Translations under genes and position numbers: made by a program
Notes under the pieces: model-generated
The model's database searches: none
Seen by the model: the letters and a program-made list of their open reading frames with translations, nothing else
What the model was told of the DNA's origin: nothing
In this document: piece after piece, positions 4,852-19,532 of the stretch
Layout: every line of letters begins with the position of its first letter
How positions within the stretch are numbered: the first letter of the stretch is position 1
DNA from: Vitrella brassicaformis CCMP3155
Lineage: Eukaryota; Protista; Chromerida
Length of the DNA stretch: 64,000 nucleotides
Assembly: GCA_001179505.1 (NCBI GenBank)
Contig: CDMY01000298.1
Location: 1-64,000, forward strand
Direction of reading: 5' to 3'

Positions 4852-7560
4852 ATGGCATCCAACATGGACGGGGCAGCGCCACTCGAGGCCGACATCAAGG
4901 CCGCAGCGGGCAACAACAAGCGAGCACGAGCCGAGGGCGACGGTGCCGAGCCAGCCAAGAAGGCAAAAGGAGAGCCACCAGCGGCAGCAGCTGCCTCTGC
5001 TGGCAACAGTGCTGCTGCAGCATCGGCGCCGCAGCCATCTCAGCTTAAGCGTGACGACTTCGAGCGGCTGATGTATGGCGACAACAACGGCAACAATGGC
5101 GGCGAGTCGATGGTGAAGACCAAGGGTGCGGACGAGGCGAATGTCAACGGGAGTGTGGCCGAGAGGGATCTGGAGAGCCGCGCCGACATGGATGTCGACG
5201 AGATGGAGGAGGGAGACGACGAGGGGCGGGGCATCCGGCGGCGGGAGGTCAAGGCAGTCGACCAGAGGGCCGGCAAGAAGCCTACCAGGGGCGCCAAGGA
5301 CGCCACCACACCCGCCGAAATTCCGCCCTACTACCCTGACGAGGCGGAGGAGTGCGTTCAGACCTTCCTATACAAACCAAGTGAGCACCAACACAAACCG
5401 ACGAAAGGCAGGCCACCAATCCATCACGGCATGTCTGTCTGTCTGTCTGTCTTGCTCTGTCTGTGTGTGTCAGATGTGCCTTTGCCGGATCTGAATCCCT
5501 ACATGGGTCAGATCATCGAGGTGCGCGTGCCGGTGGACCACCTCTCCCTCAACAACCCCGCATACCAGAACCGCCAGCTGTGGGGATGCGATTACTACAC
5601 GTCCGACAGCGACATCGTCTGCATGCTGCACCACGCCGGCTTCAAGCGACTGCAGGCTGACCCCTCCAAGGAAAAGATCGCCGGTTAGACAGAGGAGGGA
5701 GTCGGGGAGAGGGAAGACCGCCTCTCACATGTATGTTCCTCTATATTTGTGTGTCTGTTCAGGTGTGTCGGTGTATCTGAAGGTGACCAAGGGACGCACG
5801 ACGTACTCGCAGGCCACCCGCAACGGCCTCAGATCACGCAAGTGGCCATCAGAACACTGTAGGCCGACAGCCGACACACCGAGAAAAGACACGCAGAGCG
5901 AGGGGCAGATGCATCCGTGTGTGTCTGTGGTGCAGCTCACACGTTGCGTATTGTTCGCGTTGACGATTTGTTGGACCAGCTGGGCACTGAGGAGGAAATC
6001 GAAATGATGACACTCAGGTACACACCAGACCCACCCTCCGCCCTCTCTTTGCCGCCTCCCCTCACTGTGGTGTCTGTGGGTGTCTGCAGGCTTCCATCTG
6101 CGTGCAAGTCGCGCAAGCCGAGGGTGCGCAGTTCGAATGTGCGGTATTTATCGGACATCGTCATCGCATTCAACCTCTGCAATGAGCCCTGCAGCAAGGT
6201 GGGTGCGTCAGACAGACAGACAGACAGACAGGGCAGGGCTGGCAGGCAGGCCACAGGAGGGGGAGGGATAGGCGTGATGCATTAACCCTCCATCGAGGTT
6301 CTGAAATATCGTGTGGAAAAACCCATCACCATCTTTCGACTGACCATCCACCCATCCGCCGAGGGACATGTGTGCCGTGCCTGTGCTGACCGTTCCAACA
6401 TGGATGCATTCATTAAATTCTCTCGTCTGCCTGTGTCTGTGTGTGTCTGTCAGTATTCGTTGAGTGAGGTGTGCGACCGCGGGCTGGAGGTGTCGCAGTG
6501 GACGACCTACAGACTCACCAAAGAGGTACACATGGACACACACACAACACACAGCCACTCTCCCTGTCCCTCACACCCATCTCCACATACAAGTATGGTG
6601 TGTCTTTCCTCTCATCCATCCTCCCATCCATCAGGTGATGTATTTGGAGACCGAGACGGAGCGCTATGAGTTGTGTCAGGAGGGGCCGAAGAGCGCCCCA
6701 CTTCCAGAGGACTTCGACGCACAGGCGGCAGCCGGAGGGCATCCTGGCGTGCCGGTCAAGATGGAGCCCAAGGAGGAGAACAAGCCGCCCCCCCACGTGT
6801 CGGCCATCAAGTTCAAGACTTACCGGTGGGCAATATCGACAGGAAGTCTTATCTATGGTTGTGCATCGTTCGTGTGTGCGTGTTAATGCTTGCAGGTGGA
6901 GTCGCGTCAAGAGCCCCCGCAGCCTCACGCGTGAGGAGATGATGATGACGACCGTGCCCCTCCCGGCAGAACGAGTAACCCACCACAACTCACTCGACAC
7001 GACACACAGGCACACCACTCACGTCATCCATCCACCTCTTTCTGCAGCTGGAGCTGCTCAATCGCGGGCTCGACTGGACCGACATCGCCTTCGGCCGCGA
7101 CTGCATCCAGGTCGACGGCAAGGTCTACTCGGGCCTCCTGCGGGTGCAGTTCTACCCCATCCACGAGACGGCCCAACTGCCCAAGACGCGCCCCATGCCG
7201 CCAGCAGGCCTCAACAAGGACGACCGCGGCATGTGGGTGCTGCTGCAGGCCTTGGAGGACCAGGCCATGGAGGAGGCTGCCATCACGCAGAAGAACCTGA
7301 GTGCCGGGCGGGCCAGCGGGCAGCGCAGTGGTGAGGGCATGGAGGTGCCCGTGATCAAGGAGGAGGAAGAGCTGCGACATGAGGAGATGGAGAGGGAGAA
7401 GCGAAAGAGAGCTGGTGAGTCGACAGCGAGGGGAGGAGAGCGACCTTTGCAATTTCGTGTGGTTGGCCATGGTGGTGTCTCTCTCTGGGTGTGTGTGACT
7501 GAACTGTCAGTTGGGCTGCTTGCCGCTGGGGCTGGAGATGACCCCATGAATGGACCATAA
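4852..7560 (+). CDS. RXT3: RXT3-like histone deacetylase complex subunit (multi-exon)
   Basis: IIEVRVP...NRQLWGCDYYTSDSDIVCMLHHAG; YSQATRNGLRSRKW; FNLCNEP..YSLSEVCDRG...MYLETETERYEL match the Rxt3 domain and plant RXT3-like C-terminal motifs; last exon approximate. Confidence 0.8.
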
Positions 7561-7844
7561 GCTTATGATGAAGATGGACCGGACGGTCTGTTTTCTAGAG
7601 AGAGGTGCTGGTGCTGCTTGCGTGGAGAGAGAGAGAGGGAGAGACAGAAAACTGTGAGAGCAGCAGAGAGCTGCACCCGTGCCTACGTGGCTGACTTTTC
7701 AACACATAACACGCGAACGCTGGTAACCTTTCGGCACAAGCAGGGGCTTGGCTTCGTAGCAGGGTTTCAAGAGAAGGGTTCCAAACCCTTGTCCATGACC
7801 TTCGCAAGAGAAAACAGAAAATTGAGGAGGAAGGGCGTGAGTGG

Positions 7845-9134
7845 ATGCATCATGGAGGGCAGAGCCTTGGGCAAAGCTTGGCCGTCCGCCTGTGTGCTGC
7901 AGACCTGGCTCTCTTCGACGGATACCGATGGACCACACGCCTCAGCCCAAGGACCCACGCCCCATCTCGTAAGGACAATGCAATGCACATAGGTTGACAC
8001 ATCTGTCCCTCTCTCTATTGCCGTTTCTTCCCTGCAGTGGTGAGGGCTGAGGCAGCGATAGGCCGCTTTATTATTCAGGAGGCCTATCAGCTGGCGCTGC
8101 CCAAAGGCTTTGTCGTCCTCCATCGCAACAGCAGCCCGCTCAATGCATGCCTCTCGAACCTGGAAATCGGCACACTTCAGCTCATGGCGACTTACGCCCT
8201 GCTCGACAGACGGAAGAGCTCAAGGCGAGACCACCAGGCCGAGTTCTTCCGCATCCAATCTGAGCTCAACACGCTGCTCGAAGCGGCCGGCTGGGGCAGC
8301 TACGTCAGGCAGCATCCTCTCTATCCCTCTGCTGCCGACGGTCGCCCTCATTGTTTCATGCCCCACCGCTATCATGGGTTCAGCCGTCATGGATGGCCGC
8401 CGTGGCCCATCTGTGTGAGTCCGCAGCATGCATGGGTGGAGAAGTGGGTGTCGTGGTGCCTCAAGAACGAGGAGGGGCGGTTCAGGGTGAAGGGGGACCT
8501 CAGCCTCAGTCGCATGATCATGCAGCGGATGATCGATGGGCCTATTCCAAAGTGCATTTCCATCGGCGGGAGGGAGGAGAAGATCGTGGTTGATCACATT
8601 AACGGTGACCCTCTGGACAACAGACGCAGCAACCTGCGGCTTGCGACATCGCAGCTCAACTCTCTCTATGCAAGACGGCCACCTGCAGGGAAAAGACGGC
8701 CGTCTGGGGGTGGCCGTCTTGCAGACCCGAGGGACGATCAAGGCAGAGCGATTGGTGGTGGAGCCGAAGGGATCGCCCGGCCGGTGTACGCCGTCGTGGA
8801 CACAGCAGAAGACCACCACACTCATGACAGCTGCAATGATAACAATGACGGTGCTGCCCTGTCTTGCCGTGATGTGGATGGCTCTCTGCCAGTGGGCATC
8901 CGCTACTCCGAAGAGCGGGAGAAGAAATACTGCGCCGCCCTGACAATCAAGGGCAGAAGAGTTCTCAATCGGTGCTACCCCTCTTACGAGCTCGCGGAAG
9001 CTGCTCTCAGGCAGGTCAAGAGCGCGGCTATTGGGCGACTGGAGGAGCGTTTCAGGCGTGCGCTGGTGGAGGCTGGGTGGGGGCATCTTGTGCAGTGGAC
9101 TTATGCTGATCGAGAAGGGAATGGGAAATGTTGA
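7845..9134 (+). CDS. HNH endonuclease-AP2 domain protein (two HNH_3-like modules plus one AP2), one intron 7969-8037
   Basis: VVDHINGDPLDNRRSNLRLATSQLN (8583-8660); AP2-like GIRYSEEREKKYCAALTIKGRRVLNRCYPSYELAEAALRQ (~8886-9020); degenerate first HNH VVLHRNSSPLNACLSNLEIGT (~8109-8175); the GTAAGG..CTGCAG intron keeps the frame from ATG 7845. Confidence 0.8.
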
Positions 9135-9440
9135 TGTGTTGATGTGGATGTGGGCGCTTGTGTAGATAGATGAACAAACTGAATGCGCTCTTGTGTGTGA
9201 GTGTGAGAGTGTGTGTGGCATGAGGGAAGGGATTCGGTGATCGGATCAACAAAGCTAACAAATGATAGCCTTACAGAGCCAGCCCACAGACATCGGCCAA
9301 TCCGTCTCCATCGACACACCCACCACACCCACCCACGCAACAGCCGATAGACAAAAATCTCCCCCAACCCACCCGAGACAAACATTCGAAAGAGGCAAGA
9401 CACATACATACACCAGGCAGACGCCCATCCATCATTTAGA

Positions 9441-11451
9441 TCATTGAGTTGACGGCACGTAGTAGTTGAATGTGTCGCGTTCGGGGTTAGATCGCTGCGC
9501 GTTCGCACGTGACGTCTCGTTGTACTTGTTGGCCAGCCTCGCCTTCTCCTCAAGGTCTTCATCGAACAGCCACATCCGGGCCATCCACAACCGATCTGAC
9601 ACGCCCTGGCTCATGTAAAGAACACCTGACACACACACCACACCAGCACATTGCACCACATGGCAGGTGAGAGAAGGGTGCCATGCATCCGTGCGTGGCT
9701 GTGCGTGCGTTGTTCTTGTCTCCTCTCACCGTCGCGAACGAGCGAGGGGAATTCGAGCCAGAAGGCGACGTTTGGGATCATGTCGATGCCTCTCGCGTTG
9801 TGCCGCTCCTGCTTGAGGTAGATGCCGATCGACACGTACAAGGCGGCAGCAACCAACACACATATCAGCAAAAAGGTCGCCTGCACACACACACACACAC
9901 ACATCCACAACACACACACAATCTCATCCCGCTCCCTGCTTCATTGTGTCTGACTGTCTTGCTGACCGGTCCCAGCCGCCTCCTGCCCGAGTGCGGTGTG
10001 ACGTGGTGGTGGCTGTGATGCCCGTGGTGCTCGCCATGGTGCCGGAAGTACCCATGAGACGGGTGCATGGCGTGGTGGTGGTGATAGGGGTGGTGCGACT
10101 CCCCAGTGGCGATGTACGACTCCTCCCCTGGCGCCACGCCATGGACCATGTGGAGGTTGGGGTGGTGCCCATGGTGGGGCTGATGCTGATGGTGGGCATG
10201 CTGGTCGCCCTCCAGATGAGCCACAGCCATGTGCGGGGACCCCTCGTGGTGGGCGTGATGGCCTTCTTCGAGTCTTCTCTCTATGTGGTGGTGCTGCGGC
10301 ATGGTGTGGGGATGGTGTGGGTGGTGGGGGCCGTGGGGGTGCTGGTTGACGTTGTAAGCGTAGTAGAAGGGCTGCTGGGTGGTGGGCTGATAGCTGAGGA
10401 TGGTCTGATAATCGGCGTCAGTCAGCTGATGGCCGGGAAGGAAGATCAGCGGACACCTGAACCACACACACACACAGATCTCTGTGTGTATGTGGTGGTA
10501 TATGTTTGATCTCACCCGGCAGGTCCCCTCAGTTCGAATGTGTAGTGTGCCGATCCTCGACCATCCACTGCGTCGAAGAGGCCCTCAGGCCGCGAGGGGT
10601 CACACTTGAAGTGAATCGACACTCGGTGGTGTTCGCTGGTGTGCTGGTAGGGATCGCCATCGAAGTACGTCTGAACGAGTACCGACACATATGGACGTAC
10701 AGAATGGGCGTTGCCGTGGATGGACACTTTTCTGTGGTTGATTAACTGACTGACTGACTGACTGACCAGTTCCAGCCCTCTGGTGGCCATGTAGTGGTCG
10801 ATTGGCCGCAGATCCATGTGCCCGACATGCCCCAGCAGCCGGCAACCTGCACACACAGATGGATGAATGGAATGGACAATACACTCACTCCACACACTCG
10901 ACACACTCTGCGGCCGACTGCCTCTTCCTTCCATCTCACCGACCGTGAAATCCGGCAGTGTTGGTCTTGGACTCCATCGCTGGTGTGGCCATGCCGTCAC
11001 ACGCCTCATTGAGGTCACGGAACACAGCAAAGCGGTAGCAAAAGGTCTCAGTGGCGTTGCCGGCCATGCACCGCTCGAACTCCCCGGCCCTCTCGACGCC
11101 ACACAGATTCCCTGCAGGCACCAACACAACAGAAACACACACTCGCCTGGCGTCGTCTGCTTGTCCCTCCCTCCCTCTATCCCTGTCTACAAACTTACAC
11201 GTGTAGTGGTTGAATGGCGACGACCATTCCACGATGCATGGGTGCTTGCCGTTCCTCACAGCCGGTGCCTCGAGCTTCTTCAGGTAGGCCTCGTGCTCGG
11301 GGATGCCGTGTTGGAGGTAGTGGGGCTGCTGGCTGTCGTGGTGATGCTCACTCGTGTGCCACGATGAGAGATCACCCGCTTCGTTCGCCAGAGATGCGAC
11401 GGACGCGATGGCGACCAACGTCAGGCCTAGAAGAGCCTTCATCTTCTGCAT
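9441..11451 (-). CDS. Type I membrane protein of the M6PR/ATG27 (MRH domain) family with a His-rich juxtamembrane insert
   Basis: Signal peptide MKALLGLTLVAIASVASLA; Cys-containing lumenal region with HRVSIHFKCDP and HYTFELRGPAG; TM FLLICVLVAAALYVSIGIYL followed by RGIDMIPNVAFWLEFPSLVRDG, typical of CD-MPR/ATG27 tails. Confidence 0.7.
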
Positions 11452-12569: not shown

Positions 12570-15500
12570 AGGGTGACGTTGAGCGTGCGGCCCAGCGGTC
12601 GCCCGAGGAGCTGTCGCGGGAGATCGACGAGCTGTCCGGATCGTAAGCCGTACCACACACACAACACACAATACTGCGCCCATCCATGTGTGTACTTCAT
12701 GTGTGTGTGTGTGTGTGTGTGTGCAGTGGTGCGTTTCGCGAGGAGTATGAGGACCTGAAGAGGCAAAGACAGCTCGACCAAAACAGACTCACGTACGCAG
12801 CTGTGCACCACACACACCCTAAGCAGACAGACAGACAGACAGACGGACAGACGTGTGTTAGTGGGCACCCATCTCTCTCTGTGTGTGTGTGTGTATAGTA
12901 TTCTGTTCAAGCAGCGTCAGGCGATGCACAAGGAGGAGAAGCTGCTGAGGCAGATGAAGAACGAAGCAGAGGAGTGGAAAAAGAAACAAGAGCAACAGGC
13001 GCGCTGGCGGGCCGACACACCCACCACCGCCACCACCACCACCACCACGCCACCACGGATCCCCCTGCCTGTGTTCTGTGTGTGTGTCAGTATGCCAAGA
13101 AGGGCCAGAAGCAGCTGTTCCGTCTGCTGTGCATCGACAGCAACCTGCAGAAGCTCTGTGAGAAGATCGAGGGCAAAGATGACAGCCCCGGACTCCAGTA
13201 AGCCAACACAAACACACACACACACACACAGACAAAATGGGCATCCCATCCACGTGTGTGTATGCGTGCGTGCATTCTGTGTGTCAGGTCTCGTCTCGAG
13301 GAGGCGCAAACCACCATGGAGGAGGCCGCCGCACAAGTCAAAGAGGTGAAGAAGTACCAACCCTCCCCCGCCCCCCCCCTCCCCCCCGATGGATGCACTC
13401 GTGTGTGTGCCTGTGTGTTGTGGTCGTCAGTTGGAGAAGAGCAAGGCCGCGCTGCACATCGAGGCCACCAAGGCGGCCAAGGCCGTCACACGCATCAGAA
13501 ACGAACTCAAAGACATCGTACCGTACACGCGCGTGTCCATCCGATGCATGCTGTCTGTCCATGTGTGTGTGTGTGTGTGTGTGTAGGCATCTGAGCTGAC
13601 GCCCACTCAGCAGCGTCTGGAGTTTGCCGAGAAGCAGAAGGTGGAGCTGGAGGCCAAACTCAAGAAGGAAGCCGAGAAGAGCGAGTCGCTCGAGAAGCGC
13701 ATACAAAAGGTCCGCGACCCCCACCCCCACCCCACACCCTCACACGCGCGCGCACAAGGAGACGGCACACTGATGCGTGTGTGTTTGTTCAGTTGGAGGA
13801 GCTGATCAAGGAGTCCGAGGAGAGGTTGGCAGCGATCCGGCAGCAGGAGCCGCGCGACCTCGACATGACCCGAGAGCAGGAGGACGTACGCACACACTCC
13901 AACAACAATCAACTCGCCACACCACACCGCTCCTCTCTACATGTCTCTGTGTGTGTCTGGTGTGCGTGTATGTGTGTGTTTAGGAGTATGAGCGCATCAA
14001 GGAGATTGCAGAGCGGGAGACGGCACCAGCGGTGAGAAGGACAAAGGGAAAGGAAGAGAGAGAGGAACACGGCACGTGCGTGTGCGTTCTATGAATCAGC
14101 GTCAGTCCCGTTCGCACCACCAGAAGGACCTGTCGGAGCTCAAATCAAAGATCAACGCGGTATACACCGTTGGGTGAAGTGCCTTGCCCGCACGCACTCC
14201 TGCACACACATGTGCACCTGCGCGTCTGTATGCGACTTTGCAGGTGGAGACGGACATCCAGGACGGCGAGAGCAAGCTGAAGCGGGTCAGCTGACCCAAC
14301 CCACGCTATGCGCCACAAAGGTGTGCCTTGTGTGTGTGTGTGTGTGTGGCGTGTGTTCAGCTGGAGGGCGAGTTGGAGAAGGCGCTCGAGGAGAAGAGCA
14401 ACACCGAGCAACACATACAGCAGAGAACGGTCGGTCAGGCACCACAGCAACACCATCCACACACACACACACGTGTCCTCCCTGATGTGTGTGTGTGTGT
14501 GTGTGTGTGTGCAGACTGACCTGGACACCGCGCGGAACGAGCTGCAGGACAAGAGCAACACATTCGACGTACGCCAGCCATCCCCCGACCACTACTACAC
14601 ACCCCACCCTGTGCACACACCCATCGTGCCTGTTGGTGTGTGTGTGTGTGTGTGTCGTGTCATCAGACGGCCTTGAAGCGCAAGGGCGAGCTCGAGCAGC
14701 GCATCCAAGCACTCAATGACAAGAAAATGAGCTGCTCTGCCAGCAAGGTAGCCCACCTTAGCCCCTGCCGACACACAACACACCCACACACACACCCACA
14801 CACACACACTCGCACGCGCGTCTGTGTGTGTGAATGGTTCGCCCGTCGATCAGCGCATGATAGAGAAGGAGCGCGAGCAGCAGCGCCTGATAGCTGAGAT
14901 GAAGGAGCACGTGCCGGGAGTGCACGACAAGCTCTTTAACCTCCAGAGCTGCCCACAGCACAAGCTCAGGGTGGCTGTGGCGGCCGCCCTCGGCAAGTGG
15001 GCCGACCACGTCGTTGTCAATGACTATGAGACCGCAAAGGTGCGTCCGCCCTGGAAGGAAACATCGCAAAAGGCCGTACGCTCCCTCTCTGTCTGTGCAC
15101 GTGTGTTGTGTGGATGGTGCGTTTGTGTGTGTCAGCGTGCGATTGAGTTTCTCAAGAAGAAGCCGAAAGCTGGTCAGATGGACTTCCTGCCCCTCAACAC
15201 CAAGACCAAAAAGACCGACCCACGGTCGCTACACCACACACACAAGACACACACAACACATGGATGTGTGTTGGTTGTTCTCGTCTCGTCAGTCTGCGTG
15301 ACTTTGGCTCGAAGTGTCGCGCGGCGATCGACTGCATCCAAGTCAAGGACGAGGCGTACCGAGGCATCTTCGAGGCAAGACACCAAAGGCACACCCAGGC
15401 ACACACACACACACACACACACAACTACATATATGTGTGTGTGTGTGTGTGCAGAAAGCGTTGGGCGACACGGTCATCACGGACGACCTCGAGGAGGGCA

Positions 15501-15576
15501 GACGGATCGCATTCCAGTAACCTCCCCCACTTACACACACACGCACACACAGATGATGGGCGCTTGCCATGCATCT

Positions 15577-15607
<31 letters not shown>

Positions 15608-18600
15608 CATGGATCAGGGTGTGTCCAGCTCAGAACCTGCGTGTGCGTGTGGTGACCCACCGGGCGGAGATCATCAAGAAGAACGGAAACATGTCCGTCG
15701 ACAGCTCGGTCAGCCCGCACCCCCCCACCCAAGCCCCCCACCCACACCACACACAATGGATGGCTTCTCTCCAATGTTGAGTGTGCGTGCAGGCCGGCGA
15801 GGGTGGCGGTCGCTTTGAGGCGTCTGAGCTGGAGGTACTGAAGTAACAAGACCACACACCGAACGCGCTCAACGCCGCACCGAGCAACGCGCTCTCCATC
15901 GTGTGCAGGCCATCGAAACTGAGTTGGAGGCCCTCACCAAGGAGTACGGCGACATCGCACACATAGAGGTGAGTGGGCAACACGAAGATGGTGCAAACGG
16001 CCACGTGTGAGATGCGTGTGCTGTGTTGTGCGTGTGGTGCAGTTGACAGGTTCTGGCGAGCGTGAGGCCCTCGAGCGCAAGATACGGCAGCTCGAGACCA
16101 TCATCCAGACACAATCCACTCGGCTCGACGTGCGTTGACCCTCACACCCCGCCCCCCAACACCCACACACATGTGCCCATCTCCCTCTCTCTCTCTGTGT
16201 GTGTGTGTGTCTGCGGTGTGTGCAATCAGCAACTGGGTGTGTCGATCAAGGGCAAGGAGCGGGACCGCAGCAAGACCACCGACATCGTCAAGAACGACAA
16301 AGCCAAGCTCGACCAGCTCAACAAACAGAGGGAGGAGTGCGAGGCCAAGATAGAACAGGTAGGTCGCCACCCACCATACGCGACACACGACTGCGTGATA
16401 ATCCGCACAAGTGTGTTTGTGTGTGTGTGTGTCTGCCGGTTTGTGCAGTTGTCTAACGAGATTCTGGAGTCCGAGAAGGGTCACTTCGCCGAGCTCTCGG
16501 CAGCACTCGGGGTGGACGACGTCAGAAAGGTAGACATCCAAACCTCACCCAGCAAATACGTTGATGCGCGTGTGTATCCGTTCGTTCGTTGTATGTGCTG
16601 TGCAGCTGGACGACGACATCCGGAAGGAGAAGAAGCGCCGCGAAGAGGACGAGTCCAAACTCCAAAGACAAATCGCAAAGAACAAGTAGCCATCCCCCAC
16701 ATACCACTCCCTCTCCCTTTCCCCCTCCCCCACCCCCACAAACACACCTGCGCTCTCTCTCTCTCTCTGTCTCTCTCTCTCTCTCTCTCCGTCCGTGTCT
16801 GTGTGTTGATCAGGACCGATTTGGCCAACTGCCAGCGCACCCGTCAGACGGTGGGCGACCCTGCGAAGCTGCAGGCGAGTGTGGACAAGGTCGAGTCGGA
16901 CATGATAGCGCTCAAGGAGAAGGAGGGCAAGCTCAAGAAGGACAAGATGGACAAGGAGGGGAGGCTCAAGGACAAGGAGAAACAGGCCAAGGAGAAGAAA
17001 GACGCGCAGGACAAGCACGACAAGGATATCAAAAAGTGAGTGAGCTCTGCGAATGAATGGGGATAACGGGGGGGGAAGGTCGGTGACTGAATATCTCCCT
17101 CGGCCTCCCTCTCCGTCTGTCTGTCTCTCTGTCTGTCTGTGTGTGTAGGCATCGTGAGACCCTCCGTGTCAAGCAGAAGGCCAAGACAGAACTCGAGAAC
17201 GAACTCGCCAGTGCGGTGAGACGAGACAGACCTACGCGCCCCCCACCGACCCCCACACACACACACGCCATTGCCTCTGTCTGTCTTTCTTTCTTTCTTT
17301 CTTTCTGTCTGTCTCTCTGGTGTCTGTGTGTGCAGCGGAAGCGCATCAACCAGTGCTATGTAGAGATGGTGGACATCATCCGGCAGTGCCTCATGGAGCA
17401 GGTCAAGATACCACTCACAGTCGGATCCATGGACGCATTCAGGTCAGCACCCACCCTACCTCATCGCCTCCTCCTCACTCCACACACCATCTGTCTGTCA
17501 TGATGGCTGCAGGCCTCTGTTGGACGAGGTAGAGGTGCTTGACCGCGTTGCCGGGGCCGCCACCCCCTCCCAGACGCCGTCGCTCACCCTCAACGACTCG
17601 CACGACGCTCCGGAGGGCTTCGACGCGCTCCAGAAGAAGTTCATGGAGTGCTGCAAGAACCTCTCGGGGGAGGGGGGCGGCTTCGACTACAACAACCTCG
17701 GCGATGAAGTATATGCCGCTGCGGTGAGCATGGAGGGGGAGAGGTCGGCGCATCGACCATCCCTCCATCTCTCTCTGTGTGTGTGTGTGTGGGTGGGCGG
17801 TGGTAGGGCAAGGGTGCCGATGCGATTCAGCAGCAGCTGGATGAGTACGACAAGGAGATCGAGGCCATCCAGGCTGAGCTTGACAAGACCAAGCCCAACA
17901 TGAAGGCCGAGGAGAAACACGACGAGGCCATGCAGCAACTCAAGGTCAGTCAGTCGGGGCAAACAACCAGCCACTGGGCCTTACACACACCCTTTGGTGT
18001 GCCTATGTGTCTGCAGAAGCTGGAGAAGGAGTACAACAAGGCGCAGAGGGACATGAGAGGTGCGGTGCAGTCTCCACGACAGAGACACACAGAGATGTGC
18101 ACACACACATGAATAGATGTCCTTCTCTCTCTGTGTGCTTGTCTGTCTGTCTGTCTGTGGTGTGTGTCTGTCCATCCCGTCAGCGACTGACCAGGAGTGC
18201 AAGGCCCTGCGCAAGAAGCGCCACGACCTCTTCCGCAAATGCTTCAACAAAATCAAACAGGAAATCAAAATGTAGAGAGCGCCATACACCCATACCACCC
18301 ACACCACACACCACACACACTCTCTCTCTGTGTGTGGTCAGCATCTACCCCGAGGTCACCAAGTTCGATGACAACGACGTGGGCGGCAACGCCTTCCTCG
18401 ACCTCGAGGACGAATCCAACGAAGAAGTCTTCAACGTGTACGCCTCACCCCCACAGACGCAAAGGCCCACACGCACGCACACACACACCCCACATGAGCA
18501 TAGCACGTGCGTGCTCTTTGTCAGGCCGGTCAAGTACCATGCCATGCCGCCTGCCAAGCGCTTCAGAGACATGTCCCAGGTGGGTGGGTCCACCTATGGG

Positions 18601-19532
18601 CAGACAGGCATACGGGAACCCCACACGGATGTGTGTGTGTGTGATATGGTCACTCAGTTGAGTGGTGGCGAGAAGACCATGGCGGCTTTGGCGCTGCTGT
18701 TCGCCATCCAGCGCTTCAGACCCGCGCCATTCGTAGTCCTAGACGAGGTCGATGCCGCACTCGGTAACTACGCACACAAATGCGCCCATGCCATCCCGCG
18801 CACTCATCGAGACGGACCGCTGTTTGTGTTGTGGTGTTTGTCTTCTTCTGTCAGATCCGCGCAACGTGTCGTCGCTCGCCCGCTACCTCCGCAAAGCCCG
18901 GTTCCAGTGCATCGTCATCTCACTCAAAGACAAGTACACCCACAACACAACACACCCAACTGGCACACCCACGCACACGCCCATCCACTCTGTGTGTGTG
19001 TGTGTGTGAGTGTGTCAGGTTGTTTCGCGAGGCCGACAGTCTGGTGGGCATCCACAAGGACCCCGAGGAGCAGACCTCCGACACCCTCACACTCGACCTC
19101 ACCGAATTCGACGCGCCGGCCGAGCGCAAACGCCGCAAGCAGGAGCAGCAGGGCTCACAACGAGACGACGACCAAGATGACCAAGATGACCAAGATGACG
19201 ACCAGGAGCCCGACCAAGACGACGAGCATGACGACCCACCATCACCAGCAGCACCAGCAGCAGCAGCGGCCGCCATCGGCAATGGAGATGACGCACAGAT
19301 GATGAATGGCGTGGCGGGGCACGACCACGGCCATGATGGCGAGGAGCAGAACGGTGTGGACGGCCATGACATGGAGGTGGACATGGTCAACGGGCAGCAG
19401 CAGCAGCAGCAGCCTGAGGAGGACGAGAACATGGGCGGCGAGGGAGGCGGTGGCGGTGAGGGTGACGTGGACATGAACGGTGTGGCGGAGGAGGGCGATG
19501 GTGAGCAGATGCAAGATGATGACGACAACTGA
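11729..19532 (+). CDS. SMC1: Structural maintenance of chromosomes protein 1 (cohesin), many short introns
   Basis: [33 protein letters not shown]; hinge motifs; [44 protein letters not shown]; acidic low-complexity C-tail. Confidence 0.96.

What the first reader, a model, noticed from the sequence alone, without database searches (positions are those of the whole stretch)
7845..9134. Spliced nuclear gene with phage-type HNH-AP2 architecture and an internal duplication
Seen: an intact-looking HNH_3 motif (DHINGDPLDNRRSNL..N) followed by an AP2-like fold. It is preceded by a second, degenerate HNH module (VVLHRNSSPLNACLSNL). Each module has an upstream W..(S/G)R.I(M/I)Q segment like the phage LHRLIM, and each ends in an (L)xEA(A)GWG helix (LLEAAGWG; LVEAGWG). 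One canonical intron is present. Established: HNH-AP2 homing endonucleases of bacteria, phage and ciliates are the proposed source of plant AP2 and apicomplexan ApiAP2 domains. Inference: a domesticated or still-mobile intermediate between a selfish HNH-AP2 nuclease and an ApiAP2 regulator in a close photosynthetic relative of apicomplexans. The repeated GWG helix may be an unnamed domain.
Basis: partly seen in the sequence, partly recalled or inferred. Interest (0 to 1): 0.8.

Follow-up and report, generated by a model that had tools for sequence, protein, structure and literature searches.

The report
Virus-derived HNH-AP2 nuclease gene in Vitrella
A transcribed, intron-bearing nuclear gene of the alga Vitrella encodes a DNA-cutting protein of the kind carried by phages and giant viruses, with a hidden AP2 DNA-binding domain; it looks like a separate viral acquisition, not the ancestor of the parasite ApiAP2 regulators.

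Summary
Window 7845-9134(+) is a two-exon gene of Vitrella brassicaformis and matches the public 406-aa model. A spliced RNA contig confirms the 69-nt GT..AG intron.

The protein has four parts:
- A catalytically dead HNH module.
- An HNH_3 module that keeps the four residues aligned to I-HmuI D74/H75/N87/N96.
- A disordered linker of about 65 residues.
- A C-terminal domain that Pfam misses but that models confidently as AP2. AP2 structures are its best structural matches.

The two "GWG" tails are real and lineage-specific. They are extensions of a helix, not a demonstrable domain.

An exhaustive search of 1.84 billion proteins found no orthologue or paralogue. All relatives are phage or giant-virus HNH(-AP2) endonucleases, and many of them are tandem. 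The gene is single-copy here, lies between the host genes Rxt3 and ATG27, and has no transposon-like ends.

My reading is a long-resident viral acquisition that probably acts as an AP2-guided nickase or DNA binder. The "intermediate towards ApiAP2" reading is not supported, because ApiAP2 expanded before the chromerids split off.

The scan noted other virus-type double-HNH genes elsewhere in this genome. I did not test those notes.

The parts
7845..7968 (+). Exon 1: start codon, residues 1-41 and the first base of codon 42. It encodes the start of module 1 (AADLALFDGYRW).
   Evidence: There is an in-frame stop 46 codons upstream in the transcript and no earlier ATG. It matches public protein P0001.
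7969..8037 (+). Spliceosomal intron, 69 nt, GT..AG, 48% GC. It lies inside the conserved N-terminal part of module 1.
   Evidence: read laying shows joint 7968/8038 'skips 69, GT..AG' in the X6 contig. Logan contig L002 translates to the exact 406-aa protein. Neighbouring introns are 70-109 nt.
8038..9134 (+). Exon 2: residues 42-406 and the stop codon at 9132-9134.
7884..8087 (+). Module 1 N-terminal part (residues 14-58, interrupted by the intron). It corresponds to the D.eD....W...HR.IM region of viral HNH_3 endonucleases.
   Evidence: Alignment A3. Block-mean pLDDT is 62-90 over residues 11-60. I-HmuI residues 1-105 align to model residues 17-100, Z 5.6, rank 1 of 48,161.
8097..8174 (+). 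Degenerate HNH motif of module 1 (residues 62-87). The core residues are L69, H70, N82 and M91, so both positions aligned to the metal ligands are lost.
   Evidence: Pfam HNH_3 17.9 bits, E 0.0024, below the cutoff. Residues read. I-HmuI equivalence.
8235..8297 (+). Helix and first GWG tail (residues 108-128, ...ELNTLLEAAGWG). There is no AP2 sheet in module 1.
   Evidence: The model has a helix at 108-124 with low pLDDT. Similarity of the two tails has p=0.0013. The AP2 profiles find no second AP2.
8409..8564 (+). Module 2 N-terminal part (residues 166-217, ...WVEKWVSW...LSLSRMIMQ...).
   Evidence: Alignments A1 and A3. Block-mean pLDDT is 70-94. I-HmuI aligns to model residues 6-92, Z 4.8 over 77 residues.
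8574..8663 (+). Intact HNH_3 motif (residues 221-250). D227 and H228 lie at 8592-8597, N240 at 8631-8633 and N249 at 8658-8660.
   Evidence: Pfam HNH_3 39 bits against a cutoff of 24.8. PHROGs HNH endonuclease families down to 9e-14. The profile alignment to I-HmuI puts these residues on D74, H75, N87 and N96.
8682..8879 (+). Low-complexity, disordered linker (residues 257-322). It may be the remains of a first AP2 domain.
   Evidence: Block-mean pLDDT is 28-61. A collinear blastp alignment with giant-virus-context protein P0048 places its first AP2 opposite this stretch. No AP2 signal remains here.
8883..9041 (+). Cryptic AP2 domain (residues 324-376, SLPVGIRYSEEREKKYCAALTIKGRRVLNRCYPSYELAEAAL...).
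   Evidence: Pfam AP2 gives no hit, even at E<=10. Profiles built without this protein score 12.3 bits (E 1e-5) and 21.6 bits (E 1e-8). Block-mean pLDDT is 91-96 with three strands and a helix. VIA matches: 9hqv_Yn Z 6.7, 7et4 6.7, 7wq5 6.2, 1gcc 6.2, 6sy0 5.4.
9042..9098 (+). Extension of the AP2 helix and second GWG tail (residues 377-395). GWG lies at 9075-9083.
   Evidence: One continuous helix spans residues 358-386, then GWG, then a short helix at 390-395. GWG is absent at this place in 161 relatives.

Best explanation
This is a nuclear gene of Vitrella brassicaformis, single-copy as far as the window and the searched protein collections show. It descends from a viral (phage or giant-virus type) tandem HNH_3/AP2 homing endonuclease. 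It has been in the genome long enough to gain a host-type spliceosomal intron inside a conserved module and to be transcribed between ordinary host genes.

Shown here:
- Module 2 has the I-HmuI-like N-part and beta-beta-alpha-metal motif with all four core residues (D227, H228, N240, N249).
- A C-terminal AP2 fold with an unusually long helix follows a disordered linker.
- Module 1 is a copy that lost both positions aligned to the metal ligands (L69, M91) and the AP2 sheet, but kept the lineage-specific GWG tail.

Inferred:
- The duplication, or a homogenisation of the tails, took place in this lineage or in its unknown donor.
- The protein binds a specific DNA site through the AP2 sheet and the N-part.
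- If it is still active, it nicks one strand with the single live HNH site. The dead module then serves as a scaffold or an extra DNA-binding surface.

It is a separate acquisition that runs parallel to the origin of ApiAP2. It is not the ancestor of ApiAP2 and it is not a currently mobile element.
For: - Identity and gene model.
- Intron and transcription: a spliced contig lacks six GT..AG or CT..AC introns across three adjacent genes, and L002 encodes the exact protein.
- Host context: Rxt3 upstream, ATG27 and SMC downstream, on a 130-kb contig. No terminal repeats. No second copy in the window.
- HNH_3. Core residues.
- AP2.
- Module 1 fold.
- Orphan status and virus-only relatives: one search gave 280 hits, the best non-self at 5.6e-11. 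Searches agree.
- Tandem architectures among the relatives: HAHA 48, HHA 25, HAH 23, HH 15.
- Giant-virus contexts for P0048, P0024, P0041 and P0057, with an NCLDV capsid and DUF5760/5767/5871.
- Collinear alignment of P0001 217-380 with P0048, E 1e-10.
- BFVD and Atlas matches to Nucleocytoviricota and phage HNH endonucleases.
Against: - Nuclease activity and DNA binding are untested.
- The conserved N at position 252 is Y. The AP2 has W->Y and LG->LN changes and fails the Pfam model.
- There is no orthologue, so purifying selection cannot be measured.
- GC3 is 0.67 against 0.77-0.78 in the flanking genes.
- The donor is unresolved. The HNH-part tree has no support. The best single AP2 match (P0078, 46% identity over 37 aa) sits in a phage-like contig. 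P0018, P0020 and P0021 are also in phage-like contexts.
- The RNA evidence comes from assembled contigs, so it gives no level or strand.
Confidence: 0.72

Rival explanations
1. Transcribed relic. The gene is a decaying leftover of a viral insertion with no present function, and its ORF is intact only by luck or youth.
For: Module 1 is catalytically dead, and the stretch between HNH and AP2 is disordered low-complexity sequence. There is no orthologue or paralogue. GC3 is lower than in the neighbours. The AP2 is too divergent for Pfam.
Against: The ORF has 406 codons with no stop or frameshift, although there was enough time to gain an intron and erase an AP2. All four core HNH residues are kept. 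The AP2 and both HNH cores model with block-mean pLDDT of about 87-96. The transcript is correctly spliced.
Confidence: 0.2
2. One reading: a surviving evolutionary intermediate on the path from an HNH-AP2 nuclease to the ApiAP2 transcription factors.
For: The gene is in a chromerid and has the full HNH-AP2 architecture. The genome paper did not find this at full gene length (PMC4501334). The best structural match ties between Toxoplasma AP2IX-6 (28% identity over 47 residues) and plant TEM1.
Against: The gene is an orphan found only in Vitrella. ApiAP2 expansion predates the split of chromerids and Apicomplexa, and ApiAP2 is also present in dinoflagellates. The viral-module profile is far closer to plant AP2 than to ApiAP2. 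The AP2 scores best with profiles of virus-linked AP2 domains.
Confidence: 0.04
3. An active selfish homing endonuclease gene that is still spreading in the Vitrella genome.
For: One HNH site is intact and an AP2 recognition domain is present. The scan notes several other virus-type HNH genes in this genome (not tested here).
Against: Only one copy was found in the window and in the protein collections. The gene is not inside an intron or an intein, it has no repeats at its ends, and it carries its own spliceosomal intron.
Confidence: 0.03
4. Contaminant or assembly artefact from a phage or a virus.
For: All detectable relatives are viral or metagenomic.
Against: The gene is flanked within about 300 bp on both sides by intron-bearing eukaryotic genes on a 130-kb contig. 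The locus is found in contigs of runs from four studies, and three of the four studies laid cover the gene itself. A spliced transcript spans the gene and both neighbours.
Confidence: 0.01

Closest known systems
I-HmuI-like HNH_3 homing endonucleases with AP2 domains of phages and bacteria (His-Me finger group 2; PMC5714182)
   Same: The order N-terminal part, D-H...N...N motif, AP2 is the same. Pfam HNH_3 is met. I-HmuI is the best structural match for both modules.
   Different: This gene is nuclear, spliced and flanked by host genes. Its first module is dead. It has a 65-residue disordered linker, its AP2 is not recognised by Pfam, and it has lineage-specific GWG tails.
Tandem HNH/AP2 endonucleases of giant viruses (metagenomic P0048, P0041, P0057, P0024; BFVD Yasminevirus A0A5K0UAN8, Klosneuvirus A0A1V0SKU9)
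   Same: It has two HNH modules in one chain. Its AP2 begins LPxG(I/V) and is followed by a long helix. It is collinear with P0048 over residues 217-380.
   Different: In the viral proteins the LP-type AP2 lies between the two modules, whereas here it is C-terminal. Identity outside the HNH core is low, and the tree does not resolve a donor.
Germ-line-limited HNH-AP2 genes of Tetrahymena thermophila (Wuitschick et al. 2004, cited in PMC4117751; the paper is not held, so the details are from memory)
   Same: An HNH-AP2 endonuclease-type gene residing in an alveolate nuclear genome.
   Different: As I recall, those genes belong to repeated, germ-line-limited mobile elements. This one is a lone gene among housekeeping genes and is transcribed. 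I made no direct sequence comparison.
ApiAP2 and plant AP2/ERF DNA-binding domains (PF00847)
   Same: A three-stranded sheet packed on a helix. The matches are 1gcc (Z 6.2, rmsd 2.2 over 51), 6sy0 (Z 5.4) and 9hqv_Yn (Z 6.7).
   Different: It fails the Pfam model, it is attached to a nuclease, it has an extended helix, and it has no ApiAP2 orthology.

Membership tests
HNH_3 / I-HmuI-like His-Me finger endonucleases | Sequence match to PF13392 above the curated cutoff | tested here: met
   54 bits for the whole protein and 39 bits for module 2 alone, against a cutoff of 24.8. Module 1 alone scores 17.9 bits, below the cutoff.
HNH_3 / I-HmuI-like His-Me finger endonucleases | Core residues equivalent to I-HmuI D74, H75, N87 and N96 | tested here: met
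   Module 2 has D227, H228, N240 and N249. Module 1 has L69, H70, N82 and M91, so it fails. The roles of these residues are from my memory of Shen et al. 2004.
HNH_3 / I-HmuI-like His-Me finger endonucleases | beta-beta-alpha-metal fold preceded by the N-terminal DNA-binding strands | tested here: met
   1u3e_M aligns at Z 4.8 over 77 residues to module 2 and at Z 5.6 over 79 residues to module 1, where it ranks 1 of 48,161. The Z values are modest.
HNH_3 / I-HmuI-like His-Me finger endonucleases | Mg/Mn-dependent DNA nicking or cleavage | not testable with these tools
   This needs purified protein.
Homing endonuclease genes (mobile) | Location in an intron, an intein or a variable free-standing site, with spread to empty alleles or multiple copies | tested here: not met
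   Single locus between Rxt3 and ATG27. No other copy in the window or in the protein collections, and no terminal repeats. The whole genome was not searched.
AP2 domain (PF00847) | Match to the Pfam AP2 model | tested here: not met
   No hit at E<=10 for the whole protein or for residues 300-406. phmmer against PDB also gave none.
AP2 domain (PF00847) | Homology to AP2 domains shown through intermediates | tested here: met
   Profiles of virus-linked AP2 domains, built without this protein, hit residues 324-374 at 12.3 and 21.6 bits, against a shuffle maximum of 7.0 and 3.3. The partners P0078 and P0009 carry sub-threshold Pfam AP2 at the aligned place.
AP2 domain (PF00847) | Three-stranded antiparallel sheet packed against a C-terminal helix | tested here: met
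   Block-mean pLDDT is 91-96. AP2 structures take six of the eight best VIA rows, at Z 5.4-6.7.
ApiAP2 transcription factors | AP2 of the apicomplexan type, no nuclease, and orthologues or paralogues in Myzozoa | tested here: not met
   No chromerid or apicomplexan relative turned up in the exhaustive search. An HNH nuclease is present. The profile of the relatives matches AP2IX-6 only at E 0.13-0.31. No AP2 phylogeny with ApiAP2 sequences was made.
Giant-virus tandem HNH/AP2 endonucleases (unnamed group) | Two HNH_3 modules plus an LPxG(I/V)-type AP2 with a long helix, encoded in Nucleocytoviricota genomes | tested here: inconclusive
   The architecture and the collinear alignment fit, and the contexts of four relatives are giant-virus. 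However, the tree is unresolved and the best AP2 match is in a phage-like context.

The most novel reading that the evidence does not exclude
The gene is a functional, domesticated AP2-guided nickase or DNA-binding factor caught part-way through the change from nuclease to regulator: one HNH is already dead, one is still intact, and the AP2 is retained. On this reading, viral HNH-AP2 genes can enter and settle in the nuclear genome of the closest free-living relatives of Apicomplexa. That would be a living replay of the route proposed for the origin of plant and alveolate AP2 factors.
Probability: 0.15. Interest if true: 0.7.

Novelty: new member of a known kind. Interest (0 to 1): 0.42.

Why it matters
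How alveolates obtained their AP2 domains is an open question. The chromerid genome paper states that no homology to bacterial AP2 genes was found at full gene length (PMC4501334).

This gene is a full-length HNH-AP2 homologue in a chromerid nucleus, and it is spliced and transcribed. It shows that such transfers from viruses do happen and persist in this lineage. It also offers a concrete protein for testing whether an endogenised nuclease keeps cutting or turns into a plain DNA binder.

It does not itself explain the origin of ApiAP2. It also shows that Pfam-based AP2 censuses miss divergent virus-type AP2 domains.

Tried and rejected
- Pfam AP2 on the whole protein and on the C-terminal piece gave no hit.
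- phmmer of exon 2 and of residues 318-400 against PDB gave nothing relevant.
- Foldseek against PDB with the two-domain model gave no hit at E<=0.001, although AP2 and I-HmuI entries were among the top rows. VIA re-alignment was needed.
- Two word-index searches found no paralogue or orthologue.
- Cluster look-ups of 20 relatives showed no chromerid source.
- The search for terminal or inverted repeats flanking the gene found only AC/TG-rich low-complexity matches.
- A tree of the N-part and HNH (137 modules, 91 columns) had 3 supported branches of 134 and did not place the Vitrella module, so I name no donor.
- The LP-type AP2 profile has an advantage partly by construction, because its members were picked by a motif this protein shares. 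Without the motif it scores 17.0 bits against 15.2 for the canonical profile, so this test does not decide between the two subtypes.
- Composition cannot show amelioration, because several related giant-virus contigs are themselves 56-64% GC.
- Looking up the scan's notes by sequence gave a blank.
- The Wuitschick 2004 and Magnani 2004 papers are not held.

Full report
**What is there.** The window is the first 64 kb of contig CDMY01000298.1 (130.6 kb) of Vitrella brassicaformis CCMP3155. On the + strand, an ATG exon (7845-7968) and a long ORF (8038-9134) are separated by 69 nt that begin GT and end AG. The spliced product is identical to the public 406-aa model P0001, named "HNH nuclease domain-containing protein". 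In the transcript there is an in-frame stop 46 codons upstream and no earlier ATG.

**How I handled the spliced model.** I did not type or join the exons for any search or fold. I used the exons by reference, or the database record P0001 that the search returned. The only joining was inside one script, which concatenated the two exons to count GC3 and codon usage.

**Intron and expression.**
- Four runs from four studies were laid on 6500-10500, and three of them cover the gene itself.
- Run X6 contains one 5,279-nt contig that skips 7969-8037 (GT..AG), four introns of the upstream gene, and one CT..AC intron of the downstream minus-strand gene. It therefore derives from spliced RNA.
- The same contig (L002, Logan SRR646408_3180) encodes the exact 406-aa protein.
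- Run X1 has a contig over 8567-9013, together with spliced contigs of the neighbours.
- Contigs give neither expression level nor strand.

**Context.**
- The neighbours are Rxt3 (4852-7560, +), ATG27 (9441-11442, -) and an SMC gene. The gaps to the neighbours are 285 and 307 bp.
- No terminal direct or inverted repeats bracket the gene, and there is no second copy in the window.
- GC is 0.60. GC3 is 0.67, against 0.77-0.78 in the neighbours.

**Domains.**
- Pfam finds HNH_3 (E 1.3e-14, two stretches). Module 2 (residues 221-250) passes the cutoff and module 1 (62-87) does not. PHROGs gives HNH endonuclease families.
- A profile of 136 viral modules, built from alignment A2 (which also holds this protein's module 2 as its first row), aligns to I-HmuI (E 4e-10). 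That alignment equates D227, H228, N240 and N249 with D74, H75, N87 and N96. I recall these as the metal ligands, the general base and the structural Asn; I did not re-read Shen et al. 2004.
- Module 1 has L69, H70, N82 and M91, so it has lost both positions aligned to the metal ligands.
- AlphaFold with viral alignments gives both modules the same order of elements. I-HmuI residues 1-105 align to module 2 (Z 4.8 over 77 residues) and to module 1 (Z 5.6 over 79 residues, rank 1 of 48,161 chains).

**The AP2 question.**
- Pfam AP2 does not hit.
- The segment 324-376 aligns in register with the AP2 domains of viral relatives.
- Profiles built without this protein hit exactly this segment, at 12.3 bits (E 1e-5) and 21.6 bits (E 1e-8). 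The maxima over 2000 shuffles were 7.0 and 3.3.
- The best individual partners carry sub-threshold Pfam AP2 at the aligned place.
- The segment models with block-mean pLDDT of 91-96 as three strands and a helix.
- Its best structural matches are AP2 domains: Toxoplasma AP2IX-6 in the mitoribosome (Z 6.7, rmsd 1.6 over 47), TEM1 (6.7), WRI1 (6.2), AtERF1 (6.2) and PfSIP2 (5.4).

**Duplication and GWG.**
- The N half and the C half align significantly.
- Both halves end in L(L/V)EA(A)GWG (residues 120-128 and 382-390). The tails are similar (p=0.0013), and none of the 161 relatives has GWG at that place.
- Module 1 has the tail but no AP2 sheet.
- In the models the second GWG closes a helix that runs on from the AP2 helix (358-386). 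I see a duplicated, lineage-specific helix extension, not evidence for a separate domain.

**Relatives.**
- HMMER against 1.84 billion representatives gave 280 hits at E<=1e-3. Only one non-self hit was below 1e-10, and almost all hits go through the HNH core. There is therefore no detectable orthologue or paralogue, including in Chromera.
- Most of the 161 relatives retrieved across the three protein searches are themselves tandem (HAHA 48, HHA 25, HAH 23, HH 15). The two-module plan, including a first module without AP2, is therefore common in the viral pool.
- Contexts are giant-virus for P0048, P0024, P0041 and P0057, with an NCLDV capsid and DUF5760/5767/5871. They are phage-like for P0018, P0020, P0021 and P0078.
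- P0048 aligns collinearly with residues 217-380. Its HNH lies opposite the HNH, its first AP2 opposite the Vitrella disordered linker, and its LP-type AP2 and helix opposite the Vitrella AP2 and helix.
- BFVD and the Atlas point to Nucleocytoviricota and phage HNH endonucleases.
- The tree is unresolved. A giant virus is the more natural donor for a eukaryote, but that is inference only.

**Comparison with ApiAP2.** The chromerid genome paper concludes that ApiAP2 expanded before chromerids and Apicomplexa split. It found no full-length homology to bacterial AP2 genes. An orphan confined to Vitrella, whose relatives' profile matches plant AP2 far better than AP2IX-6, cannot be the ancestral intermediate. 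It is a parallel case.

**Other notes of this scan.** The scan lists further virus-type double-HNH nuclear genes in this genome, some with introns and some broken. I reached the giant-virus link before reading these notes and did not test them. None of those genes appears among my hits as a close relative.

**Verdict.** This is a new member of a known kind, of moderate interest.

Noticed in passing
window 8669-8723: An imperfect 55-nt palindrome lies inside the coding linker just after the HNH motif and encodes ...ARRPPAGKRRPSGGGRLA.... As single-stranded DNA it folds at -22.9 kcal/mol, z = -5.9, and no shuffle folds as well. It could mark how the linker arose, for example by slippage or a small insertion.
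   Followed up: partly
L003 11157-11798, L007 5717-6181, L008 9490-9993: In three giant-virus contigs the tandem HNH/AP2 gene sits directly next to a P11_C-domain gene. This suggests a conserved insertion site for this endonuclease in one group of giant viruses, which are 56-64% GC.
   Followed up: no
window 6500-10457 (L002): One assembled RNA contig runs through Rxt3, the HNH-AP2 gene and the antisense ATG27 gene. The intergenic gaps are only 285 and 307 bp, so transcripts of neighbouring genes probably overlap or abut.
   Followed up: no
window 7325-7338 and 8034-8047: An exact 14-nt repeat, GCAGTGGTGAGGGC, occurs once in an exon of the upstream Rxt3 gene and once across the intron acceptor and the start of exon 2 of the HNH-AP2 gene. 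I expect roughly 0.03-0.1 such matches by chance in this 4-kb stretch, so it may still be coincidence.
   Followed up: no
window 9185-9220, 9875-9920, 6528-6562, 10453-10478: TG-rich and CA-rich tracts flank the gene and lie at intron borders of the neighbours. The read tool skipped them as repeats. They probably belong to the (AC)n/(TG)n intron pattern noted by the scan at 12643-19018.
   Followed up: no
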